Of a stretch of 64,000 nucleotides of DNA, positions 5,170 to 47,400 are shown in pieces; position 1 is the first letter of the stretch; the number at the start of each line of letters is the position of its first letter. Location of the stretch: the NCBI GenBank assembly GCA_002269645.1, contig NIVC01000424.1, positions 186,001-250,000 on the forward strand, read 5' to 3'. The translations under genes were made by a program, and so were the position numbers. Under the pieces are notes generated by a model. That model saw nothing but the letters and a program-made list of their open reading frames with translations. It made no database searches and was not told where the DNA came from. The stretch is from Macrostomum lignano (taxonomy: Eukaryota).

Positions 5170-8076
5170 TCAGAGCTCTTCCCTGGCCGAGTGCGCCCCG
5201 GACGGAGCGAATGCCTGCTCAGCACTCATGGACATCCTGGCCGCCGGATCAACCGCTTCAGCGGCGGGGGCGGCCTCGTCGTCTTCGGCATCGCGAACGT
5301 CGTCAGTAGCCCGCGATTCCGTGTCAGCCGTGAAGGCGCGACTGCTGTGCGGCCTGCGCTCCCTGTTTGCTGAATAGGTCTTGCCGTGGTACACCTGGTC
5401 GACAAAGTTGAACACCTGCGTGGCCGGCTGCCAGGGTTGCCGAGGCTCCACCGACTTCCCATCGGTCAGCTGGTTGTTAACCACCTTCTCCAGCCAGTCG
5501 GCCGCGCGCTGTGACAGCTCAGAGCGAGCCATTTTGCCCAGCGGCAGTCTGTGGATGAGCCTATTGCTGGAGCCCGCAGGCCTTGTCAAAGCAACCAAAG
5601 CTGGCAGATTCAGACCCGAGAGCTGGTGCACCAGATCGTTCAGATGGCTAAAGTGGCGCAGGTTCATGTGGCAGACGGTGGCTCGACCGGTGAACTTGGC
5701 TCGGAGGTGCTCCAGCATGTCGGCGCTTTCGTTCTGGTTGTCAACGTGGAACAGAATCGCTAACGGACGGTTGCGTTTTAGCGCCGATGGCAGGTACACC
5801 CAGGTGCAGGGGAACACGGAGTCCAGGTGATTGTTCTCAACATAGTTGGCCAGCTCTGTAGCATCGTCCAGGGAGCCGCTGTACGGACTCACGCTTGGCT
5901 TGGCGTCTCGGTGGACGGCGGTCAACGTACCTTTGTCTTTGTTGTTCTTCTCGTGAACAAAGACTTCACGGAATCGATTGGACTTGGCGAAGACTGCCAA
6001 TTTGGTAGGCAATTCGGCGCCTCGATACACGAATGCGCGCGGTTTTAGGGAGATTATCTGTTTCAAAACCTGCTGCGTCTCCTGCTCGGAGCTGGTTGGA
6101 ACGACAGGCGGCTCGAAGGCGAGCTTCGTGTACAAGCACAGATCATCAGAGACAATCGGGCCCGAGTAGGTGTTCAGCTGGATGCCCCTGCTGAACATGG
6201 CAATCGTGGGATAGGAAAGGACGCCCAGCTTCTGGCAGATTTCGTTGCCCTCAAAGCAGTCGATCTTGACTAGTTGAACATCCGGGAAGCCCAGTCGTCT
6301 GGCGCAGTCGCCAACGGAGGCCCAGATAGATCGGGCAGCCTTGCACAGCGGGCTCCAGGACACGGTGAACAAAACCATCCACGGCTTGTCTTTACCGGCT
6401 AATTCGAAAAAATTGCTCATTAACTTATCGTCAGATTCAACGACTAAAACGCCCGAGACATTGTAAATATCCCTGAATTTCAGCTGCTCAACGAAGGCAT
6501 CTGTTTGATTGCTGACTCGAATCTCGTCTACTAAATCTTTTGTGTCTTCGTCCGCTCGGGCCATTTCGCCGGAGATGTGGCCGCTTTTAATCAACTTTTC
6601 AGGCAGCTCAGCCACGTCGGTATTAAAGACTTCTCGAGATGACTGGATAATGATCTGGTAGCTGCCCTCCTGAGCTATATGGCGCACAGTTGAGTCCAAA
6701 GTTGCGATCGGTTCGTCATTTTTGAGCACAGCAAACGCCCCATTGGGAAATCGCATGAAGTAGCAGGGTCGCTCGAATACCTCCTGCAAGTTTAAGCCAG
6801 TGTCAACGTCCTTCAGAATCTGCAGAGCCGTGGCCTTGTTGAGAACAACAGGATAGTAAGTTATGCTGAAGGACGAGCCCAGATATGACGTCAACGAGTC
6901 CATCATCTCCAGGCTGATCATCGGATCTGTGAGAAGTTCGTCTACTGGCATGACAGCCAAAACGTATGAAGCTGTACTGTGAACAAAGTCGCTGAGCTCA
7001 CTAACTGCAGTAGACTTGTACGTCGGATACGAAGTGCCTGGCAATGAATGGGCGGCCAACACTCCGTGCAGCAAGAATGCAGAATATTGCTCAGGAACGA
7101 GCATCTCGTTAGCGATCTTCATTAATGGTTTACAACTGAAAACCCACTTGGCATCTGACGAGCAGATTTGTCTCGTGTACAACGCTAGAAAGCTTTCATG
7201 CTCTCGAATCTTCCATCGGTACAGAGGTCGATCAGCCTCCTTTTCGATGTAGCTCAAAGGAGTGGCTATGATGTGGAAAGCGAAGCTCGATTTCAGGGTT
7301 AATGCCGCCTCCAGGAACCAAGCCAACTGTTGGTAATAAGCCAGGTTTTTTACCGGGCCAGCAGAGAACACGGCTACAGGTAGAGCTGCACCAGAAGTCA
7401 ACTGCTTGCCATTGGAATCATCCAGCTCCGACTGGATGAGATACTCGGTACCAGTGGAAGTAGTCAGTCGCAGCTCGCCCAGCTCTTTAGCAATGTAGGC
7501 CTGCCGTTCGACCATTCGGAAATGAACGTACTGAAGCATGTTGAGCAGAGTGGTAGGACGCTCTTTCTCTTTGTTTTCAATCAGCGAGCAGCCGAAATTC
7601 TGCGAACAGTGGCCGCTGATTAGGAATACGAATTTGCTAACGTATCCACCTGTGCAGGCAATGCGCAGTCGTTGACACGCTGAATTGGCCGATTTCAGGC
7701 ACTTTGTAACGCCAATGTACGAGTTGTGGCGCTCCATTTCGCTGGCAATCTCAAGGGCTGGATTGTTTGGCACAGTCAGTTCTTCCATGAACTCGCTATG
7801 AGCAAAGATCAATACGGTGACGCGGCTCATGAAGGTGTCCAGCGATTGGTCCTGCTCCTGCGCCCGACGCGCAAAATGCTGGATGATGGAGCAGTTTCTT
7901 GCCGGCTTGCTGGCATCTTCTTTGTTAGCCGCTAGACAGGACGGCAGCTGGATGCCCTCCAAGATGGAGCGAAACTCTTCTCCGTCGCAAAAGTTCTTCT
8001 TGACCTTACTGCCGGCCAACGACTGCACTGCGCTGCCTATTAGAAGAAGCAAAAGCAGTCCGTGATTCAACAGCAT
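5170..8076 (-). CDS. TXNDC16: Intronless ER thioredoxin-fold protein, TXNDC16/ERp90-like (968 aa)
   Basis: True ATG at 8076 (CAAAAATG context). Signal peptide MLLNHGLLLLLLIGSAVQSLA. Trx-like domain WMVLFTVSWSPLC...VKIDC...ICQKLGVLSYPTIAMF...YSG resembles the TXNDC16 domain as I recall it. C-terminal REEL ER-retention signal. Orthology not tested. Confidence 0.75.
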   Translation of the reverse strand: MLLNHGLLLLLLIGSAVQSLAGSKVKKNFCDGEEFRSILEGIQLPSCLAANKEDASKPARNCSIIQHFARRAQEQDQSLDTFMSRVTVLIFAHSEFMEELTVPNNPALEIASEMERHNSYIGVTKCLKSANSACQRLRIACTGGYVSKFVFLISGHCSQNFGCSLIENKEKERPTTLLNMLQYVHFRMVERQAYIAKELGELRLTTSTGTEYLIQSELDDSNGKQLTSGAALPVAVFSAGPVKNLAYYQQLAWFLEAALTLKSSFAFHIIATPLSYIEKEADRPLYRWKIREHESFLALYTRQICSSDAKWVFSCKPLMKIANEMLVPEQYSAFLLHGVLAAHSLPGTSYPTYKSTAVSELSDFVHSTASYVLAVMPVDELLTDPMISLEMMDSLTSYLGSSFSITYYPVVLNKATALQILKDVDTGLNLQEVFERPCYFMRFPNGAFAVLKNDEPIATLDSTVRHIAQEGSYQIIIQSSREVFNTDVAELPEKLIKSGHISGEMARADEDTKDLVDEIRVSNQTDAFVEQLKFRDIYNVSGVLVVESDDKLMSNFFELAGKDKPWMVLFTVSWSPLCKAARSIWASVGDCARRLGFPDVQLVKIDCFEGNEICQKLGVLSYPTIAMFSRGIQLNTYSGPIVSDDLCLYTKLAFEPPVVPTSSEQETQQVLKQIISLKPRAFVYRGAELPTKLAVFAKSNRFREVFVHEKNNKDKGTLTAVHRDAKPSVSPYSGSLDDATELANYVENNHLDSVFPCTWVYLPSALKRNRPLAILFHVDNQNESADMLEHLRAKFTGRATVCHMNLRHFSHLNDLVHQLSGLNLPALVALTRPAGSSNRLIHRLPLGKMARSELSQRAADWLEKVVNNQLTDGKSVEPRQPWQPATQVFNFVDQVYHGKTYSANRERRPHSSRAFTADTESRATDDVRDAEDDEAAPAAEAVDPAARMSMSAEQAFAPSGAHSAREEL

Positions 8077-8715
8077 TTTTGCTTGAACCGATTTGAATCC
8101 CAATTCAAGTGTCGTAACGCGCAACAGGAAATATTTAAGCCAATGAGTTTTACTTATGTTTCCTTAGACTAATATTTGCTGCTGCTGCTGCTGCTGCTGC
8201 GATCACTGCGTGTCAAGCCAACTCGTGCAGATCAGTCAACCCCCAGCTCCAAAACTGCGTTTTCCAGAGAGGGTTGGAGAAGGGGTTGTTGGAGTTTACA
8301 GTCCGAGTCGAGTCAGACTAGAATTTATTAAGATCTGCGGCCCGAAAAATGAGTGCGGAGTGAGGTCGAGGGGTGGAGCGCTTCGCACAGAGACACTACA
8401 GCAGAATGAAAAAGAAAGAAAAATGGAAAGAAAATGCCTTATTTGCGGTTTGAAACACGCGGTAAGAGTTGCAGAGGAAGAGAATATCGTGCAGAGAAGT
8501 GTATATAGGTATACTCGTAAGACAAGTAGCAGTTTGTGTATCAGAGAGATATCTGCGAGCGTACTAGCAAAATGTGTACAAGCTCAGTTATTCAGCCAGC
8601 CTGCAACCTACCGGCACCCCATTATGGAATTTTGGAAATTGCTAAAATTCTAGCAATACTCAAAATAGCTACATGAGTCTCAGGACTCAGCAATAGTTTT
8701 TGAGTTGTTAGACTC

Positions 8716-9572: not shown

Positions 9573-11707
9573 CGTGTACGTGAAACTTTAATACATGCGG
9601 CTCAGTTTATAGATGGCCTTTTTTAAATTTTCTGTTCTCAATAATTTTGTCCTATTTATAACTCACTCTTGAGTTCCCTTCGTATACTGTGACTTCGTCA
9701 TAAAAGTCCAAAATTCTTCTGCATTTCTATTCAGGGTTTAATCAAGGACCACTAGGAACACTAGTCTAGTTGTCCTTGGATTTAGTTCTTTCAATTTGAT
9801 ACACGTCGGGAATGGTAGTTTCGCGATTTACAATTATCTTTGATTTTCATGATGTGATATTAACTTCAGAAACTTTTTTGCATGTTTGCAACAAATCACA
9901 ATGCCTGATTCAAGTTTTACTCACTTGAACTAGGGTACATTCCGTTGTTTAGTTGCTTTAATTATCGAGTGAGGATATGCTCGTTTTTAGTCGTTATTGT
10001 TTGAATTAGTTGCGATATTACATTTTCCTAGAAATAACTATTCTTATTGACAGATTGACTGACACAATCATACCAAAACTTTAAAGCAATTTTTCGAGCT
10101 AAACTTTAGGCGTCCGCTACAAAACTTCATGCAGTAATTCAATAAGAACTATGGAACACGATGCCAATAAGACTGGAGCTGGGAGTGGACTAAGTGAGTT
10201 TCGCTCGCAGTTTGTGATTGCTATTTAAAAGTATAAAACTAATTTGCCTTTTATTTTTGAGATGATTTTATGAAGAAAGTCAATACTGGTTATCATTTCA
10301 AACATGACTTAGACGATGTTCATATCTCAGCTATTATTAAATTTTTCTTATTAAATATTTGTTTGGCAGAGCATCTTTTTGTTGTTTTTCTTTTTATTTG
10401 AAATAAATTTAACCATTTGGGTATGCCTAAGCATGCATCAAAAATTGTTTCAGTCCTCAATGATTTTATACAAAACTATATATTATAGTTTTTAAACTTA
10501 ATAACCTTAACTAAGATTCAATGCTCCCATCAAATAGTATTTGCTATCAATTTTGAAATTTTGGCTTTTTCTGAAGAAAAAATTCATATAATAATAATTT
10601 TTTGTTTTGATAATATTTAATATCATTATCAGTTGCTTAATCGATTCTTTAAAGTCCATTACAGAAAAGTATCTATTTGAAAAATAACACAGTTCCAATT
10701 TTTAGCATTCAATTCCAGCTCAAATATGAATATATATACTATCTATAGTATCTATCTATCTATGTATAGTATATACAACTTTTTTACTATATATTTCAAC
10801 TTCAATGGGTTATTTTTACAAGTTTTTTACACTAAAAGCATGTCATATTTAATAATTTAACATATTGGTATTGGTGAAAAGTTAAATAATTTTGAGCAGC
10901 AAGAAATCAGAGTTGATAATTTTGTTCTTTTAATTCCATTTTCTATGCTTAGAAAAGCAAACTTCAATTAAATATATTTTCAAACTGAAACTACTAAATA
11001 CCTCCCTCAAAGTAAGTATAACTCAACATATTCTATGCCAAAATGGTTTGGATGAACCTAGAATTGATGCCAGAGTTTTTTTAATTTTGTTGCCTAATAA
11101 TACTGGAAATTTGTTCTATATGGTATATTACTCATCAATTTTGAACATCTGAATAAACTAATTACTAACTAGATAACGAGGCATTCACTTCTTTAGTGAA
11201 AGTCATAGTTACTTAATCCGATTACTCGATAACAATGTATGGAGCCTTATTTGTTGGTTTTAAAATAATCTGATTTAACATTCTTTTTATGGCTTGCTGT
11301 AGCCACCCTGCCCTCGATATTGCCCTGGAATGAACCACCTGTGCACGGTGTCCTCTCTGTCTGCCTACTATAGAATTTTTTTATCATTAACAGCCAAAAT
11401 GTTTTAGTTCCGCCTTTACTAACGATAGATCAGAGCCATAATCCAGATCTCGCCTCCCCAGTCATTTCTTCCCATTTCTCTAGCCTGCCGATCGATTTTT
11501 TTAGGGCGAAGCATTTTCCTCTTTACTTTGGGTGAACAATTCTCTCTGTCTCAGCGGTAAAAACCAAACCAGTTGTTGTCAGACAGAAACTGTACACTGG
11601 AGCTGTCTGCCGCAATTTCTTGTCTATGCCAAGCCATGGAGCCTTAGAACCAGTGCACGGAGTGGCAAGTCCATCTCCAAACAGATTTGTCTTGGCGAAA
11701 CCCCGAA

Positions 11708-12098
11708 ATGTCTGACTGGCTGGAAAAGTGTCTGACTGGCTGGAAAAGTGTCTGACTGGCTGGAAAAGTGTCTGACTGGCTGGAAAAATGTCTGGCTGGC
11801 TGGAAAAGTGTCTGACTGGCTGGAAAAGTGTCTGACTGGCTGGAAAAGTGTCTGACTGGCTGGAAAAGTGTCTGACTGGCTGGAAAAGTGTCTGACTGGC
11901 TGGAAAAGTGTCTGACTGGCTGGAAAAGTGTCTGACTGGCTGGAAAAGTGTCTGGCTGGCTGGAAAAGTGTCTGACTGGCTGGAAAAATGTCTGGCTGGC
12001 TGGAAAAGTGTCTGACTGGCTGGAAAAGTGTCTGACTGGCTGGCAAAGTGTCTGGCTGGCTGGAAAATGTCTGGCTGGCTGGAAAATGTCTGGCTGGT
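11708..12098. repeat. 20-bp minisatellite (TGTCTGACTGGCTGGAAAAG), about 19 copies
   Basis: Direct tandem repeat. Confidence 0.97.
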
Positions 12099-12367
12099 AA
12101 AGTGCTGCGAAAATGCAGTAAATTTAATATTTCAACGAAATTTTTGGCCAATAAAAGAAAACACCAATGCGTCGATTGATTCCTAAGTTCTGAGTTTTAG
12201 AACTCCTTGGCTCTCACAGTCTGTACTAAACCCCTGAGCTGAGTCAGCCGCCAATTCTTTTTAATCCCTTTCTCTGTTCTCCTTTTTGAGCAGTTCCTGA
12301 GTAAGCGATTGTGCACAAAATATTGTGCAGCCCGCCCGTGTCTGTCCCCGCGCTTTCCGCCTGACAA

Positions 12368-12374
12368 TATAAAG
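12368..12374 (+). promoter_or_regulatory. TATA box candidate for the EML gene
   Basis: TATAAAG about 140 bp upstream of the inferred ATG (12509). Confidence 0.35.
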
Positions 12375-12508
12375 CAGGAGAAATTTCAAGGGAAGGCTAA
12401 GTAGATTTCGGCGTGTGTAAACTGCTTACTGAACTGTGCCAACTTTGTAAATCATAGGTGATAGCACAATTGGCATCAGATTTCTGATCAGGATTCAAGC
12501 CGACAAAA

Positions 12509-15500
12509 ATGCCAGCTGTGTCCGCTTATCAGCATTCTGCATCGCTTGGTAATATTTCATGTTTGAAATCATTTTATTTTTAGATAGATAGAGAGGGTCG
12601 CTTTCATAGGCCAGAAATTTCATGAACTCGAAATTTCATGAACTCGAAATTTCATGAACTCGAAATTTCATAAGCTCGAAATTTCATGAACTCGAAATTT
12701 CATGAACTCGAAATTTCATGAACTTGAAATTTCATAAACTCGAAATTTCATGAACTCGAAATTTCATGAACTCGAAATTTCATGAACTCGAAATTACATG
12801 AACTCGAAATTTCATAAACTCGAAATTTCATGAACTCGAAATTACATGAACTCGAAATTTCATAAACTCGAAATTTCATAAACTCGAAATTTCATGAACT
12901 CGAAATTACATGAACTCGAAATTTCATGAACTCGAAATTTCATGAACTCGAAATTTCATGAACTCGAAATTTCATGAACTCGAAATTTCATGAACTCGAA
13001 ATTTCATGAACTCGAAATTACATGAACTCGAAATTTCATAAACTCGAAATTTCATGAACTCGAAATTTCATAAACTCGAAATTTCATAAACTCGAAATTT
13101 CATGAACTCGAAATTACATGAACTCGAAATTTCATGAACTCGAAATTACATGAACTCGAAATTTCATAAACTCGAAATTTCATGAACTCGAAATTTCATA
13201 AACTCGAAATTTCATAAGCTCGAAATTTCATGGTCTCGAGATTTCATGAACTCGAAATTTCATGAACTCGAAATTTCATAAACTCGAAATTTCATGAACT
13301 CGAAATTTAAAAGCTCGATTTTCAGAAATCTCAAAATTTAACCCAATTTGAGGTGAAATTTATAAAAATTCTTTCTAGGCATTTTCTATTTTTATTTCCA
13401 GCCGCAGATTTCGAAACTGCGTAATTATGAGCCTTAAAAATAATTAGTAATAGTATAGGTTAATTAGGTAAAATTACGTGTCGTTTTCAAGGCTCGGTAG
13501 GCGTTCAGGTAACTTGCTTACAACTCGAAAAAATGGTGCACGATTTCTCTCTTTTTTTAAAACAAAATTCTTCTGTTGAAATATACTCATATTTCTCTCG
13601 TAGAAATACTCAGAATGCTTCTTTATGAAAGAGCATTACGGTTTTTTCGATTGAACGGAGAAAATACGAGTAATGCATGATAATAGCGTGCTAACATCAA
13701 ATTTAGCCATTTTGAGTAGCAGTACTATCGGAGCAGGCTCAGTGGTTGGGAGAGGCTAGGAGAGAGCGGAAAGAGACTAGGAGAGAGCGGAGAGAGAGAC
13801 TAGGAGTGAGCGGAGAGAGAGACTAGGAGAGAGCGGAGAGAGAGACTAGGAGAGAGCGGAGAGAGAGACTAGGAGAGAGTGTAGAGAGAGAGACTAGGAG
13901 AGAACATGAACGGAGACACAAACTTCAACAAACTTCAATGGCCTATTTTAGACGGTCTGCTCACTCAGGAGAACAGCGAACTCAGGGATCGCGTGGCGGA
14001 CCTTGAGCACCGAGTTCAAGCTCAATCAGACGAGCTCACCTGTCTGAAGTCGTCTCTTTCCGACTGTCTGCGCCGCCTGGCCACCCTGGAGTCGAGCAGA
14101 GGTGGGCCGCACTACCATGTGCCAGTTCATAATTATCACGGGGCTGTGATGCACGCATCGCATTGCTCTACTGAGCTTATGGGTGAGTTGAGTTTGAATC
14201 AGGCAGTGTTGAGCCTTATTCACTCCATTGTGAGATTCTTGATTTTCATTTTTGTCAGTTTTAGCTCGCATAGAGGAAGGGAGATGAGAGGAAGAGAGAT
14301 TTGAATAAATTAAATGAGAGACAGAGAGATTGGAAGAAGAGAGAGGACATCGAGAAGACAAGAGAGATGGGAGGAAGAGAAATGGGAGAGAGAGATGGGA
14401 GGAAGAGAGAAGAGATATATGAGAGGGAGAGAGAAGAGAGATATGAGAGGGAGAGAGAAGAGATATATGAGAGGGAGAGAGAAGAGAGATATGAGAGGGA
14501 GAGATGAGAGAAGATAGTGGAAGAATAACCATTCGTGCTTATGAGTCTAAGCATAGACTACTCCATGCTGTTTAGACACACCACGCACTATCGATGAAAA
14601 CTGCATGTGTAGCAGTTGAATCCTCAGATTTTTAAGTATTCAAAATTGCAACATTTCTACATCAACTGCTGCAGTAACTTAGTCATTGCTGTAAGATTCC
14701 ACTCTCGCTAAACAATTCCAGGTGTTCCCATTTAACTCTAATTTAGCATCAGCGTGCTAAAAAAGCGAGTTTCCTCCCTAGTTACACGAAAATCCCATAT
14801 CATTGTCAGTAGTATACTATTAAAATCGGATCCGTAAATTTGCACGCCGGAATTTACCTGTTCTCAAGGTGTCAAATATGTCATTGTAATACCGGTTTTA
14901 ATACAAAATGCATTTGGCGTGTCTGCAAGGTGATTTATTATCTGAAAGTGGTTAAAAATGCACCTATTATAAATTTTTATGCCTTGATTTTGCTATCTGA
15001 TAGAACCCCAAAATGGATGCCGTTGTTATTGACTCGTCAAATATTAAAACAGACTGGCTATTGGTACGTGAAGTTGTAATTTTATCTCACTATACAAATT
15101 TGCTTGAGCCTGCTAACCTGATTGCTGTTGTTTCGTGTTGCACTAAATCCTGTTACAATATTTTTAACTATATAGCTTCACTAGAAATGAATAACTTCTA
15201 CTGTATTAAAGCTTGTTTCTAGCAATGCTACTACAAGTAGATGGACGTAGCATTTATAATTTATTATTTGCTGTAGTGAGTTAGTCAGTCACGTGCTTTC
15301 ATAGGTGCAAATGCATAGGTGTGTCGCTATTGGACAAAACAGCTGTCACGTGACTACTGGCAGCCAATAGAGATGCAGGAGAAATTTGCCGGGTGATTCT
15401 CAAGGTCGTTCTCAGTCGTGGGGTGGGTTGATTCTAAAAATAGCATAGCTTTAAGCTTATCAGCCAGGGAAAATTTGAACCTATTACCTATTAGCCAATT

Positions 15501-18500: not shown

Positions 18501-21500
18501 AGCATGTGCAGCAGGCTGTAACAGAATGTGCAACAGGCTGTAACAGAATGTGCAACAGGCTGTAACAGAATGTGCAACAGGCTGTAACAGAATGTGCAAC
18601 AGGCTGTAACAGAATGTGCAACAGGCTGTAACAGAATGTGCAACAGGCTGTAACAGAATGCGCAACAGGCTGTAACAGAATGTGCAACAGGCTGTAACAG
18701 AATGCGCAACAGGCTGTAACAGAATGTGCAACAGGCTGTAACAGAATGTGCAACAGGCTGTAACAGAATGCGCAACAGGCTGTAACAGAATGTGCAACAG
18801 GCTGTAACAGAATGTGCAACAGGCTGTAACAGAATGTGCAACAGGCTGTAACAGAATGTGCAACAGGCTGTAATAGAATGTTCAACAGGCTGTGACAGCA
18901 TGTGCAACAGGCTGTAACAGAATGTAAAAAAAATACAATAAAATGTACCATGCATATTTTCCTAGTCGTAAAGAGGCTATGGTAGTAATTAAAAGTCGAA
19001 TTTTCCTGTAATATACAATTTCTAAAAAACTTAATGAGCATTTCTTTAACCTTTCCATTTCAGAAACAAGGAACCAGTGTGGGTTAAGGGTGAGTCAATT
19101 CGATTTAAATTTGAGTATTTATTAGTACAATAGTGTTATGCAATAATTGGATACCGGGTCACACACTAAATGAATGTTTGCTATAAACATCGGGAACAAA
19201 ATGTTATATATGACATTAGCAATCACTGTAGAGCATAGATATGATAAAAATGCACTTATAGCTTACCTTGCACCTGTGTACCCCAACCTCTCTGTTTACC
19301 TCTATTTCAGACTTCAATAGACTGGAAAGTACGTTCCTTGCACTTTTATTTTTGTTTGTTTGTTTGTTTATGATTTACGTTCCTTTTTTGTCTTGGCAAA
19401 ATAAAGATGTGCAGTTTCTGAGAAAAATGATAAATTTTGTTATACTTTAATTGGCGATTATTGCAGCTATTGAAGGAAAGCGAGAGTTTGTTGGCCGTCT
19501 GCAAGGTATGGTGCTGCTGTATTTTAACCGGCTGTGTCAGCTGTATGCCTGTCTGTGTCAGTTCTATACCTGTCTGTGTCAGTTGTATTCCTGTCTGTGT
19601 CAGTTCTATTCCTGTCTGTGTCATTTCTATTCCTGTCTGTGTCAGCTGTATTCCTGTCTGTGTCAGTTCTACTCCTGTCTGTGTCAGTTCTATTCCTGTC
19701 TGTCATTTTTATTCCTGTCTCTGTCAGTTCTACTCCTGTCTGTGTCAGTTCTATTCCTGTCTGTGTCAGTTCTACTCCTGTCTGTGTCAGTTCTACTCCT
19801 GTCTGTGTCAGTTCTATTCCTGTCAGTCATTTTTATTCCTGTCTCTGTCAGTTCTTTACCTTTCTGTGTCAGTTCTATGTCATAGAAATAATTAAGTTTA
19901 TCAAGTGTCCCAATTTTAGCTTTTTTCAAAGATTTATCAGATTTTTTGCTCTGCTTTGTTATGATAATGCCATTTTTAACACCCTAAAAACTTTTCTTGG
20001 GCAGTGCAGTTTGTATTGCCATTTTGCATGAAGTAACGCTTCTGAGTTTTCTTTGCTCTTCTGCTCAAATTTTGCTTCCTGCTTGCTGCATGTTTTTGAA
20101 TTTTAAGCAAATTGGCGCTTGTTGTGCTATCTAATTAATGATTTTTAATGAGTTTTGTACCAAAATAACCGACACACAGTGCTTCGGATTCAAATTTTAC
20201 GACTGGTGCTTTCTGCGTATCTCACCTTCTCCTCTGCCCCTCTCTCCTCTACCCCTCTCTCCTCCGCCCCTCTCCCCTCTGCCCCTCTCTCCTCTACCCC
20301 TCTCTCCTCTACCCCTCTCTCCTCTGCCCCTCTCTTCTCTGCCCCTCTCTCCTCTACCCCTCTCTCCTCTGCCCCTCTCTCCTCTACCCCTCTCTCCTCT
20401 GCCCCTCTCTTCTCTGCCCCTCTCTCCTCTACCCCTCTCTCCTCTGCCCCTCTCTCCTCTGCCCCTCTCTCCTCTACCCCTCTCTCCTCTACCCCTCTCT
20501 CCTCTGCCCCTCTCTCCTCTGCCCCTCTCTCCTCTGCCCCTCTCTCCTCTGCCCCTCTCTCCTCTGCCCCTCTCTCCTCTACCCCTCTCTCCTCTGCCCC
20601 TCTCTCCTCTGCCTCTCTCTCCTCTACCCCTCTCCTTCTCTACCCCTCTCTCCTCTACTCCTCTCCTTCTCTACCCCTCTCCTTCTCTACCCCTCTCTCC
20701 TCTGCCCCTCTCTCCTCTGCCCCTCTTTCCTCTACCACTCTCCCTCGAATGATAATGTCGATGCTGTTGTACACCCTGTGTGAGCGAATGCCTTCGTACA
20801 GTATATGCTCAGGGTCTTTTCTTTACACAGTCCATTTTATCTGCCCAAATCAAACCCCACCGTTCTCACCAGAGGAAGGCATCCTGAGAATTTACCTACG
20901 TGGCCGAGCTGTCAATCTCTACGCTCCCAGCGATATTGGCGATCAGCTGTCTGCCAAAGAGATCGGCGAGGCTCCGAACACTCAACTCAAACTCGAGTGG
21001 GTCTACGGCTACAGAGGTCGAGACTGCCGGTCTAACCTTTACCACCTGCCAACTGGGGAGCTGGTCTACTTTGTGGCTAGCGTGGTTGTGCTGCACAATG
21101 TTGAGGAGGGCACCCAGCGCCACTACACGGGGCACAATGACGATGTGAAGTGCTTGGCAGTGCACCCGGATCGAATCACCATGGCCTCTGGTCAGGTTGC
21201 TGGGCACGATAAGAAGCAGGGAAAGGTGAGGATCTGCTTCTTTTGCTGACCTTATGACCTCATCTCTATCCCATACACTAAGGTCTTGACCTCATCTCTA
21301 TCCCGTACATTAAGGTCCTGACCTCATCTCTATCACGAACACTAAGGTCATGACCTCATCTCTATCACGAACACTAGGGTCATGACCTCATCTCTATCAC
21401 GAACACTAGGGTCATGACCTCATCTCTATCACGAACACTAGGGTCATGACCTCATCTCTATCCCGTATACTGAAGGTCATGATCTCATCTCTATCACGAA

Positions 21501-24500
21501 CACTAGGGTCATGATCTCATCTCTATCCCGTACACTGAAGGTCATGACCCCAGCTATATCACGTACACTAAGGTCACGACCCCAGCCATATCACTTACAC
21601 TAAGGTTATGACCTCACCTGTGACCTGCACTCTACCCCCCGCCCCGCAGCCCCACGTCCGCATCTGGAGCAGCGTGGACCTCACCACTCTTCACGTGCTC
21701 GGACTTGGAGACTTCGAGCGCGCGGTCAGCTGCCTCGCCTTTAGCAGAGCAGACGGAGGCACCCACCTGTGCGTGGTTGACGACGCCAATGAGCACGCCA
21801 TCTCCGTGTGGGACTGGAGCCGCGGTCACAAGCTGACGGAAACAAAGACTTCAACTGAACCCGTGCTGGCTTGCGAGTGCCACCCATTGGATGCCGGGGT
21901 TATCATTACCTGCGGCAAGAACCAGCTGGCCTTCTGGACTCTGGAGGGATGTCAGCTGACTAGGAAGAATGGGATTTACGATGTGAGGCCTGGGCACCTG
22001 GGAATCGGTTTATGGATACTGATTGAGCACTTTCAACACTCACCCAATTTTCGTATCCCAGATCCCCATCCCAGATACCCATCACAGATTCCCATCCCAG
22101 ATCCCCATCCCAGATCCACATCCCAGATCCTTATCCCAGATCCACATCCCAGATCCTTATCCCAGATCCCCATTACAGATCCCCATTCCAGATCCCCATC
22201 CCAGATCCTTATCCCAGATCCCCATCCCAGATCCCCATCACAGATCCCCATTCCAGATCCCCATTCCAGATCCCCATCCCGGATCCTTATCCCAGATCCC
22301 CATCACAGATCTCCATTCCAGATCCCCATCCCGGATCCTTATCCCAGATCCCCAATCCAGAATCCCCATCCGAGATCCCCATTCCAGATTCCCATCCCAT
22401 ATCCCCATCCCAGATCCTTAATCCAGAATCCCCATCCCAGATTCCCATCCCAGATCCCCATCCCAGATCCCCAATCCAGAATCCCTATCCCAGATCCCCA
22501 GTCAAGAATCCCCATCCCAGATCCCCAGTCCAGAATCCCCATCCCAGATCCCCGGTCCAGAATCACTATCATGGGATGCTCACTACAAATCCCAAATTGA
22601 TCCCTGAAAGCCCAACAACTCCAAAATCCTTCCAATAACCGAAATCTCCCCTGACGCAGAAGCACGACAAGCCGAAGTTCGTGCTCTGCCTGACATTCTC
22701 CCAAAACGGCGATCTGATCACGGGAGACTCGAACGGCAGCATCCTGGTGTGGCCCCGCGGCTCCAACCGGATTGGCCAGGCCGTGACCGAGGCTCACGAA
22801 GGCGGCATTTTCAGCCTGTGCGCTATGAAAGACGACAAGCTGGTCTCCGGCGGCCGGGACCGCAGGCTGGTGCAGTGGGACTCGGCCTACAATCGGACTG
22901 GGGCCGAGGCTACCGTGCCGGAGCAGTACGGACCGATTCGTACCTTGGCTCAGGTAGCTCAAGTTTGCATTTTGTATTATTGCAGTCTGATGTGTACTTT
23001 TGGTATACGGATGTATTTCATTATGGAATGTACAGTGTTGCTTTTGTACATTCTGTAGTGTTCTCTTAGTTAGTAAATTTTCTAGTGTACTTTTATTTTA
23101 GTACATTTTGCAGTGTACTTTAAGTTTTGGTATATTCTGACGCATACTTTTAGTCTAGTACATTTTTGTAGTGTACTTTTAGCTAAGTACATTTCGTAGT
23201 GTACTTTTAGCTAAATACATTTTTAGTGTACCTTTAGTTCCGTACATCCTGTAGTGTACTTTTACTTTAGTACATTTTGTAGTGTACTTTTAGTTTAGTT
23301 CATCGTGTTGTAATTTTAGTTTAGTGCATTTTTTAGTGTACTTTTAGTTTCGGTACATTTTGTAGTGTTGCAGCTGTACACCCTCTGTGAGCATGTGGTG
23401 TGCGCGCACAAAGATCAGAGGTGTACTGAGCGTGACTGCTTGCCTCCAACCGCCGCCAACCGCAGGGACACGGACGGCTCCGAGCAGATTGAGTGTCTGG
23501 AGTTTTCTCCGGGTGAGACTGGGAGTGGGACTGGGGTGAGACTGGGGTGAGACTGGGGTGAGACTGGGGTGAGATTGAGTTAGACTGGGGTGAGACTGGA
23601 GTGAGGCTGGGATGAGACTGATGTGAGACTGAGGTGAGACTGAGGTGAGACTGGGGTGAGACTGAGGTGAGACTGGGGTGAGACTGGGGTGAGACTGGGG
23701 TGAGACTGGGGTGAGACTGGGGTGAGACTGGGTGAGACTGAGTTAGACTGGGGTGAGACTGGAGTGAGGCTGGGATGAGACTGGTGTGAGACTGGGGTGA
23801 GACTGGGGTGAGATTGGTGTGAGATGCGGTGAGGCTTGGTTGTGCTTCTCAGACTGGCACAGGCTACTTAGACTGGCATAGGTTACTCAGACTGGCACAG
23901 GCTACTTAGACTGGCATAGGTTACTCAGACTGGCATAGGCTACTCAGACTGGCACAGGCTACTCAGACTGGCATAGGCTACTCAGACTGGCACAGGCTAC
24001 TCAGACTGGCATAGGCTACTCAGACTGGCACAGGCTACTCAGACTGGCATAGGCTACTCAGACTGGCACAGGCTACTTAGACTGGCATAGGCTACTCAGA
24101 CTGGCATAGGCTACTCAGACTGGCATACTCAAACGCGCCACCACCAGACGGGTCAATGCTGGCCCTGGGCTCCCGGGACAACAGCATCTACGTGTTCGCC
24201 TGCACCGAGGCCGGGCGCAAGTATTCGAGAATCGGTCGCTGCTGCGGTCACTCGTCCTTCATCACCCACCTGGACTGGTCTGCCGACTGCGTCCACCTGC
24301 GCTCTAACTCGGGCGACTACGAGCTGCTGTTCTGGACTGCCGCCAACTGCCGGCAGGTGAGATGCGGCTCGGGCTGAAGGGCTGACGAGTGACGGCAGCG
24401 AGAGGGGAGTGAAAGAGGGAGAGGGAGAGGGAGAGGGTGGAGAGGGAGAGGGTGGATAGGGAGAGGGTGGAGACGAAGAGGGCGGAGAGGGAGAGGGCAA

Positions 24501-41400: not shown

Positions 41401-44400
41401 GATCGGGAAACCGGGATCTCACAAGATTTTGGGATCGGGTAACCGGGATCCCATAGGATTTGGGATCAGAACAATGGGATCCATCAGGATTTAGGGATCG
41501 GGAAACCGGGATCCCACAGGATTTAGGGATCGGGAAACCGGGATCCCACAGGATTTAGGGATCGGGATCACACAGGACTCTATTACTGGAGACAAAAATC
41601 GATTCGATTACTAATTATTACCTTGAGTGGAGCCAGCCAATCAGCCAGTTCACTCAATCGGCTACTACTCGCAGACTTTCCACTGCCGCTTCCAGTAGCA
41701 GCAGAAGAAGCAGAACCAGCAGACGTTGTTGCTGTCTGTTGCTGCTGCTGTTGTTGTTGCTTCTTCCGGCCAGCCCCGGCCACCACGGCCAGCAGTCTGT
41801 CGCCGCATTTGCCAAACAGGCCGCCAACAAATTGGTCACCGTCAGCGTAGCGCAAACACGCGGACAGAATTGACAGGCAGTAGCTGCGAGTTGCGGAGCG
41901 GTAGCGTTTCTGCTGCTGCTGCTGCTGCTGGCGCTGTCTTTTAGCAGAAGACGGCGCATCGGAAGCGCCGGCAGCAACAACGCTAGAGGACTCTAGAAAT
42001 GGCAGCAATACTAGCATGCTCTCTTCTGTAAGCAGCAATTCCGCTAGCCAACGACCAGCCTGAGGCGCAGAGGCGGACATCAGATACAGTTCATGCAGAC
42101 TGGCCACGGCCTCGCTTGCCAACTCGTCTAGCAGGCCGGCCTGCTGCTGAGCTGGACCAGTCGATGACGAAGGCGACTGCGGCGGCGAAGACGACTTGGC
42201 ATCGTCAGAGGCGGCGTTGGCGAGCATCAGCCGGCGCAGTTTGTGATGCACCAATAGCCGATCAATATGGCCAACAGTGAATAATTTGCAGATCAACTGC
42301 AAACCAAGCGCTGACCAATCTGCTGGCGCTGGCGATTTATTTGCCTCCTCGTCATCGTCTCCATCATCGTCATTGGACTCCTGCTGGTTCGCCTGCTGCT
42401 CTTTGTTGCCATTGTCTTTGTTATTGTCCGAGTCGGGATTTAGCTCCGGACTTAGGCGGTAGATTATAGCCTGTAGGTAGAGTTTCAGGTGCAAATTTGT
42501 GCTTCAGGGTTCAGGCCCTCAGGAGAGGGTCTAGGAAGCTTCAGTGTTGAAGACCTCAGATAAAGCTTCAGAGAACAGGGTTCAGGGCCTCAGGACCAGC
42601 TTTAGAGAACAGGGTTCAGGACCTCAGTACAAGCTTCAGAAAAAAGGGTTCAGGACATTAAGACAAGCTACAGAGAACAGGGTTCAGGAACTTCAGGACA
42701 AGCTTCAGCGAACAGGGTTCAGGACATAAAATAAAGCTTCAGAGAACAGGGTTCCGGACATCAGGACAAGCTTCAGAGAACAGGGTTCAGGAACCTCAGG
42801 ACAAGCTTCAGAGAACAGGGTTCAGGACCTCAGATAAAGCTTCAGAGAACAGGGTTCAGGACATCAGGACAAGCTTCAGAAAACATGGCTCAGAATATCA
42901 GGACAAGCTTCAGACAACAGGTTTCAGGAACCTCAGGATAAGCTTCAGACAACAGGGTTCAGGAACCTCAGGACCAGCTTCAAAAAACAGGGTTCAGGAA
43001 CCTCAGGACAAGCTTCAAAGAACAGGGTTCAGGACATTAAGACAAGCTTCAGAGAACAGGGTTCAGGAACTTCAGGACAAGCTTCAGCGAACAGGGTTCA
43101 GGACATAAAATAAAGCTTCAGAGAACAGGGTTCCGGACATCAGGACAAGCTTCAGAGAACATGGCTCAGAATATCAGGACAAGCTTCAGGGAACAGGGTT
43201 CAGGAACCTCAGGATAAGCTTCAGCGAACAGGGTTCAGGACATAAAATAAAGCTTCAGAGAACAGGGTTCCGGACATCAGGACAAGCTTCAGAGAACATG
43301 GCTCAGAATATCAAGACAAGCTTCAGGGAACAGGGTTCAGGAACCTCAGGATAAGCTTCAGACAACAGGTTTCAGGAACCTCAGGATAAGCTTCAGACAA
43401 CAGGTTTCAGGAACCTCAGGATAAGCTTTAGACAACAGGGTTCAGGAACCTCAGGACCAGCTTCAAAAAACAGGGTTCAGGAACCTCAGGATAAGCTTCA
43501 GACAACAGGGTTCAGAAACCTCAGGACCAGCTTCAAAAAACAGGGTTCAGGAACCTCAGGACAAGCTTTAAAGAATAGGGTTCAGGACATTAAGACAAGC
43601 TTCAGAGAACAGGGTTCAGGAACCTCAGGACAAGCTTCAGAGAACAGGGTTCAGGACATCAGATAAAGCTTCAGGGAAAAGGGCTCAGGACCTCAGGATA
43701 AGCTTCAAGGAACAGGGTTCAGGAACTTCAGGACAAGCTTCAGAGAAAAGGGTTCAGGACATTAGGACAAGCTTCAGAGAACAGAGTTCAGGACCTCAGG
43801 ACAAGAAGAGGGCTCAGAATGTCATCCATAAAAGCTGTCTAGCAGATAAAAACATAAACCCGACCTGAAGCAGCAGCGGCTGAGCAGCCAGGTACTGCAC
43901 CCCGTGATCCAGGCTGAGCAGAGCCTCCAACAGACCGCAGGCGGAGTGCCGGACTCGCTGCAGTCCAGGCCGGGGCCGGGGCTCGCACACGGCGTGTCGA
44001 ACGCAGTCCATCAGGCGAACAGAATTGAAGTAATGATACAGATCTGGATAGGGGCTGTAGGGCCGCTGGGTCTGTTCGAAGCACACTCCGGCTGGTAGGC
44101 AACGTCGAGGATGACCGATCGACTGAGGCGCATTCAGATAGGCCAAGCGAATGTCAGCTAGAGCGGACGACAGCCTGTCAGCTATGGCTGACAGCTCCTT
44201 GTCGGCTGCGGCCTGCTTCTGCTGCTGACTGGCTGGTGCTGTTGAAGAATCTGCAGCTGGGTTTGCATCGTCTGCCGCTGCTGCTGCTGCTGATGCGGCC
44301 GCTTCGGCTGCTGCACTGCGTTCGGCCTGCGGAGAGGCAGAGTGCAGAAATGAGATTGGCTGAGTAGCTGAAGGATTGGCTGAGTAGCTGAAGGATTGGC

Positions 44401-47400
44401 TGAGTAGCTGAAGGATTGGTTGAGTAGCTGAAGGATTGGCTGAGTAGCTGAAGGATTGGCTGAGTAGCTGAAGGATTGGCTGAGTAGCTGAAGGATTGGC
44501 TGAGTAGCTGAAGGATTGGCTGAGTAGCTGAAGGATTGGCTGAGTAGCTGAGGATTGGCTGAGTAGCTGAGGGATTGGTTGAGTAGCTGAAGGATTGGCT
44601 GAGTAGCTGAAGGATTGGTTGAGTAGCTGAAGGATTGGTTCAGTAGCTGAAGGATTGGCTGAGTAGCTGAGGGATCTGGAAGGCTGGCCCGGCAACTGAT
44701 GATCTGTGGAGAGTGGCGGTGGCCCCCACCCCTGCAAAGTAGCACGGCACTGACCTGTTTAAACTGGTGAAACAGAGTCCGAAAATCCAACAACGATTCG
44801 TACAGATGCAGCTTGTTCAGCAGGCAGCCCATGGCGGCCACCACTCTGGCCGTGTGCTTCTGGTAAAACATTGCCAACAGTCTTTTGTATGGCGTGTCCA
44901 AGTCCATTCTGGCCAAGCATTTTCGCATATGCGTCAGATCGTCTTCGCCAAGTACGCGCGGCGGTTCGATGTACTTTTTACCTGAATTGGAAAATTTAGG
45001 AAAATTAGGAAAGTTTAACATTTGCCTACTGCAAGTAGGATAGGTGAAAATTGCAAGTAAAATTTAATAAATAGAGACAAACAATGGCTTCAAAAATGAG
45101 ATACTCTAAAGTAATTTTCTATTACTTTGGAAAAAAACTATTGATAAATAACTTAACTACTTACAGTACTCGTACTACATCGTCCAAACTTAATATTAAA
45201 TTTTACAATAGAAAATCTATACTTTCGATACATATCGGCAATTGAAAATTAAAGATAGTTAAAATCTCACCTCCTTCCGATTGTTGCTGCTGGGCGGCAG
45301 CGCTAACGGTACTACTGCTAGTAGCTGATTCGGACGTCACTCCAAGAAAAGCGTCAGCCCCGGCCGCCAGTCGAACTGAGCTGCTTAGCGCTCGAACAAT
45401 TAACAATTTAACAGACGTGGCCATGTGATCAGCCGATAGCAAATCCAGCAGCCTATGCTGAACAGATTTAGCCAGTAGTCTCGCACTGATTCGCTGATCT
45501 AAAGTACACAGCATACCGGCTAGGCTCAATCCAGCCTTCAAGTGTCTCATTATAAACGTATTAGCGTCTTGTTGTTGCTGCCTCCGAGCTGCCTGTAAGT
45601 CTAGGCCTTCCAGCGTCCAGTCTACCAGAGTGTCCATAGTAGTCTCAAACTCTGCCAGGTTGATGCTTTCAACAAAGGCCAGAGCGCCAGGCAGATAAGT
45701 AGGCAGCTGCTCCAGCTGTTCAATCCACTGCCAATTATGACTGGCAGGTTCCGCGTAGCGACTAAGCAAGTCGGCTAAACGGCTGGCAGCCTCTTCGCAT
45801 CGCTCCTCATCCTGGGTGTTGATGACTGGCTGCGCGGAGTCGTACAGGAGCTTTTTCTCCACCTGTACAATTTGTGCAGCAGATTATTGAAACTAAGATC
45901 ACGGACTAAACTCATTAGGACAATTTATTAGATTCCCCGACATAATCTGAGAATCTCACATCTCCCACAATATACATGCCCTAATATAAGCCCTAGCGCG
46001 AGAGGTCTGGCCAAGGTAAGACGCAAACAAAGCCGACTCGAGAAATACAGACGTAGTACTAACTAGCTGACGAGTAACTTAGCCTTATTAATACAGTCAT
46101 AGTTACTCCTGCCGTTTATCCAAATTTTTACTTGGGTGACGTTTTCATTTTGGGTCAACAAGTGAATCACCTCAAAAGCGGTCAGGCTCGGATCCGAGGG
46201 GAACCGCAGTTCCCTGAGCCGACACCGCTCGGGCCTGAACGCCAGCGGAAACCCCAGCTCGGCTTCGCTGAGCTCCTGCGGCATCGTCGAAGTCGTTGAA
46301 TCGACCGACTGCTCGCCCGAACTAGTCAACAGCTCCTGCTCGTCATCGGTGCACCAGCTGACATCGTCGGTAACGTCAGCAGCATCGGCAGAATCCTCTT
46401 CCTCGGCTGGCCGTTTAGTTTGGCCAACCGCGCCGGCAATAAGCGGCGCCATCGACATCGAGCCAACTGGCAGCTGAGGCGAACGAGGCCGCGAGCTCTG
46501 ATGAGGCATCTGATGTTGCTGATGCTGCTGCTGCTGACGCCTGAAGTCAAAGTTGCCACCGCTTCCGCCGCCTCGATAGCGACTAAACACTGACTGATGC
46601 TGCTGCTGTTGCTGCTGATGGTGAAACGAATGCGGTAGATGGTGAGGCGGTTGGCTGGAAGTTATAGCGGGTGGAAGCTGCTGTTGCTGCTGCTGCTGCA
46701 TCGATATATGATGAGGCGGCAGAGGAGGCGGCGGCAGAGGCGGTGGCAGTGGCAGTGGCAGCGGAAGCTGCTGTTGCTGTTGTTGAGTCATTGGAACTTG
46801 AAACTGAGACTGATGATACATCTGCTGCTGCTGCTGGAAGGCAGACATTGGATTTGGCAGGGACATTGGCGGCGGCAACTGCGGTGGAGGCATCAGTTGC
46901 TGCTGCTGCTGCTGCGAGGATGGTGGTGTCAAAAATGGAGCCTTGCTAGCCCCGCTCGGCGCGGGGGTGCCAAACACGCCCAGAGTGAGGCTACTATAAG
47001 TGCCGCGAATCACAAGCAGGTCAGTGCAGGAGTCGCTCAGACTGCAACTGGTATGACCGGATCGTTCGTCGTATTTGAGATCGCCGACTTTTTCAAAGGT
47101 GGCAGCTTCTGGGCCTCGGCGGGCGAAGAATTCCACATTGAACTGCGAAGGCCCAGTAAGGCCAACCATCGGCTCGGAGCGCTGCAGTTCGCTCTTGATG
47201 GCCACGCCGAATGGCACAATGCGGGCCTCTCGTAGGCGAACGCTTGGATTGAATAGCACAGTGTCGCATTGCACTTCCTGCGAATATGAAGCAATTGATT
47301 ACCTTAGCCTTTGATTCTCCGTGCATTGCTCACAAGATATCAAACTATTCATTAGGCCTTAATATTGTAATATCTGTTGGGTTCCTACTTAGTGGTTGGA

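What the first reader, a model, noticed from the sequence alone, without database searches (positions are those of the whole stretch)
12614..13310. Minisatellite made of perfect heat-shock elements, 65 bp into EML intron 1
Seen: the 16-bp unit reads cGAAa-tTTCa-tGAAc-t, three contiguous inverted nGAAn pentamers. By my count about 23 of about 44 units are perfect; variants (TTCATAAAC, ATTAC) break one pentamer. Established: nGAAnnTTCnnGAAn is the binding site of an HSF1 trimer, and HSF1 clusters on repeat arrays such as human satellite III. Inference: this array could be a promoter-proximal HSF1 platform or sink that makes EML, or an intronic RNA, stress-inducible, with copy number as a tuning knob.
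Basis: partly seen in the sequence, partly recalled or inferred. Interest (0 to 1): 0.8.

Follow-up and report, generated by a model that had tools for sequence, protein, structure and literature searches.

The report
Heat-shock-element minisatellite in flatworm EML intron
A real 43-copy tandem repeat whose 16-base unit spells a textbook heat-shock-factor binding site sits in the first intron of a microtubule-protein gene of the flatworm Macrostomum lignano, but it behaves like the dozens of neutral, fast-changing repeats around it, so its motif is probably a coincidence that still deserves one cheap experimental check.

Summary
The array is real: window 12614-13308, 43.4 indel-free copies of GAAATTTCATGAACTC, 23 of them with an intact GAAnnTTCnnGAA. 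[quoted passage not shown]

The window is Macrostomum lignano scaffold NIVC01000424.1. By the GenBank protein models, EML exon 1 is at 10151-10193 and intron 1 spans 10194-13951. The array is therefore in intron 1, but 2.4 kb from the donor, not 65 bp, and it is not promoter-proximal.

Three 94-99.5% identical copies of the locus carry the array with 95, 43 and 16 units (58, 23 and 10 intact HSEs). About 20 neighbouring minisatellites are shared and vary in the same way, so neither the shared position nor the copy-number variation is special.

Eight of 10 distinct unit mutations hit the GAA/TTC cores, and broken units have been amplified in blocks. This shows no purifying selection on the HSE.

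The chance of a perfect HSE per array is about 2e-4. Given the genome's 15% tandem-repeat content, I estimate some 10-30 such arrays by chance.

Best reading: a neutral intronic minisatellite that would probably bind HSF in vitro, with no evidence here that it has a function. Canonical HSEs do work in this species, and Caenorhabditis Helitron HSE clusters are a functional precedent, so the idea is testable.

The parts
12614..13308 (.). HSE minisatellite: 43.4 copies of GAAATTTCATGAACTC, 23 with an intact GAAnnTTCnnGAA (33 HSEs per kb)
   Evidence: TRF; unit list; pattern search; HSE scan
13302..13370 (.). Possibly decayed units at the 3' edge (GAAATTTAAAAGCTCG..., GAAATTTATAAAAATT). Weak hint that the array grew in situ from AT-rich intron sequence.
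   Evidence: Rotated-consensus matches of 10-11/16. A score of 11/16 occurs at 0.6% of background intron positions.
10151..10193 (+). EML exon 1 coding part (MEHDANKTGAGSGL + 1 nt), followed by donor GTGAGT
   Evidence: N-termini of GenBank proteins PAA83276.1, PAA83301.1 and PAA90608.1 mapped to the window and loci
10194..13951 (+). EML intron 1 (3.76 kb). It holds three arrays: a 20-mer at 11709-12097, the HSE 16-mer, and a GA-rich 23-mer at 13750-13903.
   Evidence: Donor and acceptor deduced from the protein models; TRF
13952..14181 (+). EML exon 2 (coiled-coil trimerisation region, [21 protein letters not shown]...). P0121 uses an earlier donor after ...LESSR.
   Evidence: tblastn of P0001 and P0121
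12509..12549 (+). It could be joined in frame at a 'ctag' acceptor about 16 bp upstream of the in-frame ATG at 13906, but no annotated model uses it.
   Evidence: Sequence; absent from P0001 and P0121-P0123
5173..8163 (-). Divergent upstream neighbour: a thioredoxin-domain protein, 997-aa ORF
   Evidence: Pfam PF00085, E = 8e-11; same synteny in all three loci

Best explanation
This is an ordinary, young, hypervariable intronic minisatellite of Macrostomum lignano. It is one of 31 arrays that make up 35% of the window. Its 16-bp unit happens to spell a canonical three-pentamer heat-shock element.

Inferred: it most likely arose in situ from AT-rich intron sequence. It grows and shrinks by replication slippage and unequal exchange of multi-unit blocks, possibly helped by the palindromic, hairpin-prone unit.

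Inferred from established HSF biochemistry: because the HSE is canonical, the array is a dense cluster of potential HSF trimer sites, and purified HSF should bind it in vitro.

Shown here: no sequence evidence indicates that binding has been selected for or that the array controls EML. Any HSF occupancy in vivo is most likely incidental, with little or no effect on a promoter at least 2.4 kb away.
For: - Tandem arrays saturate the locus. There are 31 arrays covering 35.5% of the window and 52% of the EML span. The species' genome is 15% simple and tandem repeats (PMC5730564).
- The window is identical to NIVC01000424.1. Two further syntenic copies, 94-99.5% identical in unique intron DNA, carry the array at the same place with 95 and 16 units.
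- Control: about 20 other arrays are shared by position in the same way and vary as much or more in copy number.
- There is no purifying selection on the motif. Of 10 distinct substitutions, 8 fall in the 9 core positions and 2 in the 7 spacer positions. In the three copies 38-47% of units are broken. Broken units have been co-amplified in higher-order blocks (...CCCCCCCCCtaaaCt... three times in L001).
- P(perfect HSE) is about 2e-4 per random array. With roughly 115 Mb of tandem repeats I extrapolate tens of such arrays by chance.
- A lone intronic HSE present in the other two copies is simply mutated in this one.
- The flanks show no terminal inverted repeats and no second copy in the window.
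- Six units fold as ssDNA hairpins with z = -2.67.
Against: - Within this window alone the hit is improbable (0.007 expected).
- Canonical HSEs are functional in M. lignano (PMC12801592).
- Dense HSE clusters in Caenorhabditis Helitrons recruit HSF-1 and make nearby genes heat-inducible (PMC6927752).
- The three copies are too similar for their agreement to argue for or against selection.
- No ChIP, RNA-seq or cross-species data could be consulted. Neutrality is inferred, not demonstrated.
Confidence: 0.7

Rival explanations
1. The array is a working HSF platform: an intronic heat-responsive enhancer, or a sink. On heat shock it loads many HSF trimers and makes EML or an intron-derived RNA stress-inducible, with output tuned by copy number.
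For: There are 23, 58 and 10 perfect canonical HSEs in the three copies. That is a density of 33-38 per kb, comparable to the Caenorhabditis Helitron clusters that bind HSF-1 and confer heat induction (PMC6927752). Mutating HSEs abolishes heat induction of an M. lignano LTR promoter (PMC12801592). At 37 C, 1,120 genes are up-regulated, so many targets remain unexplained.
Against: The array lies 2.4 kb downstream of the exon-1 start codon, not near the promoter, and there is no HSE elsewhere in the window. The HSE core is not protected from mutation. Copy-number variation is generic to all arrays here. The same paper notes that HSE presence is not sufficient, since two HSE-bearing LTR families were not induced. 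The adjacent EML copy is truncated by a frameshifting deletion. EML is not a classical heat-shock-response gene (my own knowledge).
Confidence: 0.15
2. The array is cargo of a mobile element, such as a Helitron-like or LTR-derived fragment, that spreads HSE clusters through the genome as in Caenorhabditis. It would then be one member of a dispersed family.
For: There is precedent in Caenorhabditis Helitrons (PMC6927752). M. lignano LTR retrotransposons independently acquired HSEs (PMC12801592). LTR elements make up 21% of the genome (PMC5730564).
Against: No inverted or direct terminal repeats surround the array. The flanks and the unit are single-copy in the 64-kb window. The three loci that carry it are whole-segment duplicates with identical synteny, not independent insertions. 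Possibly degenerate units at the array edge hint weakly at in-situ birth. A genome-wide repeat library could not be queried.
Confidence: 0.08
3. The motif matters for a different reason: another factor or a DNA structure. An example would be a cruciform or hairpin-forming palindromic array that affects splicing, replication or recombination of intron 1.
For: GAAATTTC and TTCATGAA are both perfect 8-bp palindromes. The ssDNA fold has z = -2.67, and no shuffle folds as well.
Against: The fold is weak: -15.9 kcal/mol over 96 nt, and the centroid is unstructured. Rfam finds nothing. Neighbouring non-palindromic arrays are just as large and as variable.
Confidence: 0.05

Closest known systems
Helitron-acquired HSE clusters of Caenorhabditis (Garrigues et al. 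2019, PMC6927752)
   Same: Both are high-density runs of tandem, overlapping canonical HSEs, with more than 10 per kb; here the density is 33-38 per kb. Both lie in or near genes, and copy number differs between loci. In worms these clusters bind HSF-1 and can make neighbouring genes heat-inducible.
   Different: No Helitron or other transposon signature was found around this array. It is known so far only at one segmentally duplicated locus. HSF binding is untested. That paper reported no high-density HSE clusters in the other bilaterian genomes it examined, so this would be an example outside nematodes, and of minisatellite rather than transposon origin.
HSE-bearing LTR retrotransposon promoters of M. 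lignano (Ustyantsev et al. 2025, PMC12801592)
   Same: Same species and the same canonical motif definition (nGAAnnTTCnnGAAn). This work shows that the motif is read by the worm's heat-shock machinery.
   Different: Those elements have 1-4 HSEs placed just upstream of a TATA box and TSS inside an LTR. Here there are 10-58 HSEs in a tandem array inside an intron, 2.4 kb downstream of the exon-1 start codon, with no LTR features.
Human satellite III / nuclear stress bodies (e.g. PMC2241877)
   Same: A tandem repeat that can load many HSF1 molecules.
   Different: SatIII is a (GGAAT)n-type pericentromeric array of very large size (my own knowledge) in heterochromatin (PMC2241877). This is a 0.26-1.5 kb euchromatic intronic minisatellite with a 16-bp unit of discrete perfect HSEs.
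Generic hypervariable minisatellites (10-100 bp units, unequal exchange, interspersed variant repeats)
   Same: The unit length, the indel-free head-to-tail structure, the interspersion pattern of variant units, the block duplications and the 6-fold copy-number range among near-identical copies all fit.
   Different: Nothing differs except that the unit coincides with a transcription-factor consensus.

Membership tests
Canonical heat-shock element (HSF trimer site) | Three contiguous inverted nGAAn pentamers (nGAAnnTTCnnGAAn) | tested here: met
   23 of 43 units in the window, 58 of 95 in L001 and 10 of 16 in L003
Canonical heat-shock element (HSF trimer site) | Bound by HSF, in vitro or in vivo | not testable with these tools
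   No ChIP or EMSA data are accessible. Binding in vitro is expected from established HSF biochemistry, which is inference.
Canonical heat-shock element (HSF trimer site) | Confers heat-inducible transcription on a linked promoter | not testable with these tools
   The differential-expression tables of PMC12801592 are not held. The paper itself shows that HSE presence is not sufficient.
Hypervariable minisatellite | Head-to-tail array of a 10-100 bp unit | tested here: met
   Period 16, 43.4 copies, 0% indels
Hypervariable minisatellite | Copy-number instability and variant-repeat interspersion between closely related copies | tested here: met
   16, 43 and 95 units in loci 94-99.5% identical in unique DNA. 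Variant maps differ and show block duplications.
Helitron-acquired HSE cluster (Caenorhabditis type) | More than 10 HSEs per 1-kb window | tested here: met
   23 HSEs in 695 bp and 58 in about 1,520 bp. The criterion is from PMC6927752.
Helitron-acquired HSE cluster (Caenorhabditis type) | Cluster resides inside an annotated Helitron or dispersed repeat family | tested here: inconclusive
   No terminal repeats, and the flanks are unique within 64 kb. No genome-wide repeat library or whole-genome scan was available.
Helitron-acquired HSE cluster (Caenorhabditis type) | HSF-1 occupancy and enrichment near heat-induced genes | not testable with these tools
   No data accessible
HSF1-bound satellite (human SatIII type) | Very large pericentromeric heterochromatic array of a GGAAT-type unit | tested here: not met
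   The array is 0.26-1.5 kb, has a 16-bp unit, and lies inside an intron between expressed genes.
HSE-bearing LTR promoter (M. lignano) | HSEs inside an LTR, shortly upstream of its TATA box and TSS | tested here: inconclusive
   No LTR-like repeat or second copy of the flanks was found in the window.

The most novel reading that the evidence does not exclude
The array is a real HSF-loading platform born by minisatellite expansion rather than by a transposon. On heat shock it recruits tens of HSF trimers inside EML intron 1. It then either drives heat-induced EML or intronic transcripts, or titrates HSF. The 16-, 43- and 95-unit copies would give graded responses. This would be the first high-density HSE cluster outside Caenorhabditis, and a natural copy-number dial on the heat-shock response.
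Probability: 0.12. Interest if true: 0.6.

Novelty: new member of a known kind. Interest (0 to 1): 0.3.

Why it matters
If the array is functional, it would show that plain minisatellite expansion, without a transposon, can create a dense and rapidly tunable cluster of stress-factor binding sites inside a gene. It would also extend HSE clustering beyond Caenorhabditis; Garrigues et al. saw no such clusters in the other bilaterian genomes they examined. M. lignano already has heat-shock RNA-seq and an HSE reporter assay, so the test is cheap.

If the array is neutral, as the evidence here suggests, it is a caution. In a genome with 15% tandem repeats, perfect transcription-factor consensus arrays are expected by chance. 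Neither conservation among recent duplicates nor copy-number variation should be read as evidence of function.

Tried and rejected
- Transcript 5' ends: a protein search with the species-specific EML N-terminus, meant to find transcript contigs, returned nothing. This happened even though P0001 shares an identical stretch with the query.
- The look-up of encoding contigs failed for the UniProt models P0001 and P0002. It succeeded only through the cluster members PAA83276, PAA83301 and PAA90608.
- Older paralogue test: a search with P0022, the ~61-75% identical second EML of M. lignano, found no M. lignano protein with a genomic record among the 120 best listed hits. Whether an older paralogue's intron carries the array could not be tested.
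- A metagenome scan for two tandem units gave 0 hits. This is uninformative for a flatworm.
- The supplementary differential-expression tables of the M. lignano heat-shock paper are not held.
- Transposon origin: the inverted-repeat search and the self-BLAST of the flanks found nothing.
- Non-coding RNA: Rfam and tRNA scans of the window were empty.
I rejected it in favour of the annotated exon at 10151-10193.
- Conservation as evidence of function: I considered treating the array's presence in three loci this way. I rejected it because the loci are near-identical recent duplicates and every other array is shared too.

Full report
**1. The observation**

The sequence at 12614-13308 is a clean tandem array. 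TRF reports period 16, 43.4 copies, 93% matches and no indels, with consensus GAAATTTCATGAACTC.

Read in register there are 22 consensus units plus one ...ACTT unit. That gives 23 units with an intact GAA-nn-TTC-nn-GAA. The other units are 10 with G>A in the third pentamer (TTCATAAAC), 6 with T>A in the middle pentamer (ATTAC), 2 ATAAGC and three singletons.

The unit is absent from the rest of the window. There are 43 matches at up to 2 mismatches, all in the array, against 0.06 expected. The array holds all 23 trimeric HSEs of the 64 kb. The motif observation is fully confirmed.

**2. Where it is**

The best protein matches to the downstream exons are Macrostomum lignano HELP/EML proteins. 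Cluster members PAA83276.1, PAA83301.1 and PAA90608.1 led to three loci of assembly GCA_002269645.1. Locus L002 (NIVC01000424.1) is identical to the window over 33,342 bp, with window coordinate = L002 + 150.

All three GenBank proteins start MEHDANKTGAGSGLN. This is encoded at window 10151-10193, followed by GTGAGT, and joined to the acceptor ttttag|AC at 13951/13952. A UniProt model built on the older assembly begins at exactly that acceptor.

Intron 1 is therefore 10194-13951. The array lies inside it, 2,420 bp from the donor and 643 bp from the acceptor. 'In EML intron 1' is right. '65 bp into' and 'promoter-proximal' are not.

**3. Context**

The window holds 31 distinct arrays of at least 5 copies. 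They cover 35.5% of the window and 52% of the EML gene span. Intron 1 alone has three.

This fits the published description of the genome. Simple and tandem repeats make up 15% of 764 Mb, and there is extensive recent duplication, with 180 Mb in blocks at least 95% identical (PMC5730564).

**4. Comparative test with a control**

The three loci share the same gene order: thioredoxin-domain gene (-), EML (+), a 374-aa gene (-), VIRMA (-). They are 94-99.5% identical in unique intron DNA.

The HSE array is present at the same position in all three:

| Locus | Units | Intact HSEs |
|---|---|---|
| L001 | 95 | 58 |
| Window | 43 | 23 |
| L003 | 16 | 10 |

The control matters most here. Nearly every other minisatellite at the locus is also shared by position, and varies as much or more. 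Copy numbers in window / L001 / L003 are:

| Array (window coordinates) | Copies |
|---|---|
| 23-mer, 13750 | 6.7 / 72.7 / 51.7 |
| 22-mer, 16934 | 90.5 / 10.5 / 9.5 |
| 15-mer, 24424 | 118 / 16 / 69 |
| 22-mer, 1864 | 21 / 67 / 69 |

Positional conservation simply reflects how young the duplicates are. Copy-number variation is a property of all arrays here, not a dial specific to this one.

**5. Internal test for selection**

Pooling the three arrays gives 10 distinct substitution types. Eight fall in the nine GAA/TTC core positions and two in the seven spacer positions. The binomial p against the 9/16 neutral expectation is 0.20, with the deviation in the direction opposite to constraint.

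Between 38% and 47% of units are broken. In L001 the variant map shows a block (...CCCCCCCCCtaaaCt...) repeated about three times. Broken units are therefore amplified along with intact ones rather than purged.

A separate lone HSE in a downstream intron, present in L001 and L003, is simply mutated in the window copy at 18998. Nothing indicates purifying selection on HSE integrity.

**6. Chance**

Random units with the window's base composition contain a perfect trimeric HSE, in either orientation, with probability of about 1.2e-4 to 4e-4 for periods of 13-49 bp. Summed over the window's arrays the expectation is 0.007, so within this window the hit is unusual.

The genome-wide picture differs. 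About 115 Mb is tandem repeat (PMC5730564) and the mean array length here is roughly 0.7 kb. That implies on the order of 50,000-150,000 minisatellites, and so roughly 10-30 arrays with a perfect HSE unit by chance. This is my extrapolation. A reader alert to any familiar factor consensus also has many more chances to find something.

**7. Origin**

There are no terminal inverted repeats around the array, and no second copy of its flanks in the window. The 3' edge has possibly decayed units scoring 10-11/16; a score of 11/16 occurs at 0.6% of background positions. This is weakly consistent with in-situ birth from AT-rich intron DNA.

The unit is built of two overlapping 8-bp palindromes, and six units fold as ssDNA hairpins with z = -2.67. 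This may favour slippage, but that is inference. Rfam and tRNA scans are empty.

**8.

The plausibility is real. In M. lignano, canonical HSEs in LTR promoters accompany more than 250-fold heat induction, and mutating them abolishes the response. However, two HSE-bearing families were not induced, so an HSE is not sufficient (PMC12801592).

In Caenorhabditis, dense tandem HSE clusters carried by Helitrons bind HSF-1 and make nearby genes heat-inducible. The same paper saw no such clusters in the other bilaterian genomes it examined (PMC6927752). At 33-38 HSEs per kb this array matches that density criterion.

Several points weigh against function:
- The array lies 2.4 kb downstream of the exon-1 start codon.
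- The core motif shows no constraint.
- The array's dynamics are the same as those of its neighbours.
- This window's EML copy has a 332-bp frameshifting deletion in a beta-propeller exon. Its annotated protein is 498 aa, against 830 aa for the L001 copy.

**9. Verdict**

The feature is real and correctly read at the motif level. It is best explained as a neutral, hypervariable intronic minisatellite whose unit coincides with the HSE consensus (confidence 0.7).

It should bind HSF in vitro. Whether it does anything in vivo is open. I put about 0.15 on a measurable regulatory role and 0.08 on a transposon-borne family.

It is a new member of known kinds (minisatellites and HSE clusters) and of modest interest. 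The interest rises if the cheap checks listed under next steps come out positive. Dead ends are listed under Tried and rejected.

Noticed in passing
window 23468-23473 (deletion junction); compare L001 28977-29375: This window's EML copy (BOX15_Mlig032671g1) lacks 332 bp of a 399-bp beta-propeller exon that is intact in the other two copies. The loss is not a multiple of 3, and the annotated protein stops at 498 aa instead of 830. This copy looks like a decaying duplicate.
   Followed up: yes
whole window; L001-L003: Minisatellites saturate the locus. There are 31 arrays covering 35.5% of the window and 52% of the EML gene span. Almost all are shared by position among three 94-99.5% identical genomic copies, yet differ up to 10-fold in copy number. 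This makes a natural data set on minisatellite turnover after recent duplication.
   Followed up: partly
window 18998; L001 20629; L003 18368: A single canonical HSE (GAAttTTCctGAA) just downstream of the 22-mer array in a downstream EML intron is intact in two copies and broken (GAAttTTCctGTA) in the window copy.
   Followed up: partly
L001 13147-14666: The 95-unit array shows a higher-order periodicity: blocks of about 15 units, ...CCCCCCCCCtaaaCt..., repeated about three times. This points to recent unequal exchange of multi-unit blocks. L003's array carries a different set of variant units from L001 and the window.
   Followed up: partly
window 12098-12613: The 516-bp unique segment just upstream of the array is more similar to L003 (98.3%) than the first 1.5 kb of the intron is (94.0%). 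This could be gene conversion, chance, or an unannotated element.
   Followed up: no
window 5173-8163 (-), 44185-47298 (-): The neighbouring genes are a 997-aa thioredoxin-domain ORF divergent from EML, and downstream exons of a Virilizer/VIRMA homologue (PF15912). The same synteny holds in all three copies.
   Followed up: partly
window 13952-14181: The GenBank models use two alternative donors for exon 2, after ...LESSR in P0121 and after ...STELM in P0122/P0123. The in-frame ATG at 13906, which a naive ORF reading would take as the start, lies upstream of the real acceptor.
   Followed up: partly
tool behaviour: The word-indexed protein search returned no hit for the 217-aa EML N-terminus, although P0001 in the same database contains a long identical stretch. 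Low-complexity, species-specific queries can be missed entirely.
   Followed up: no
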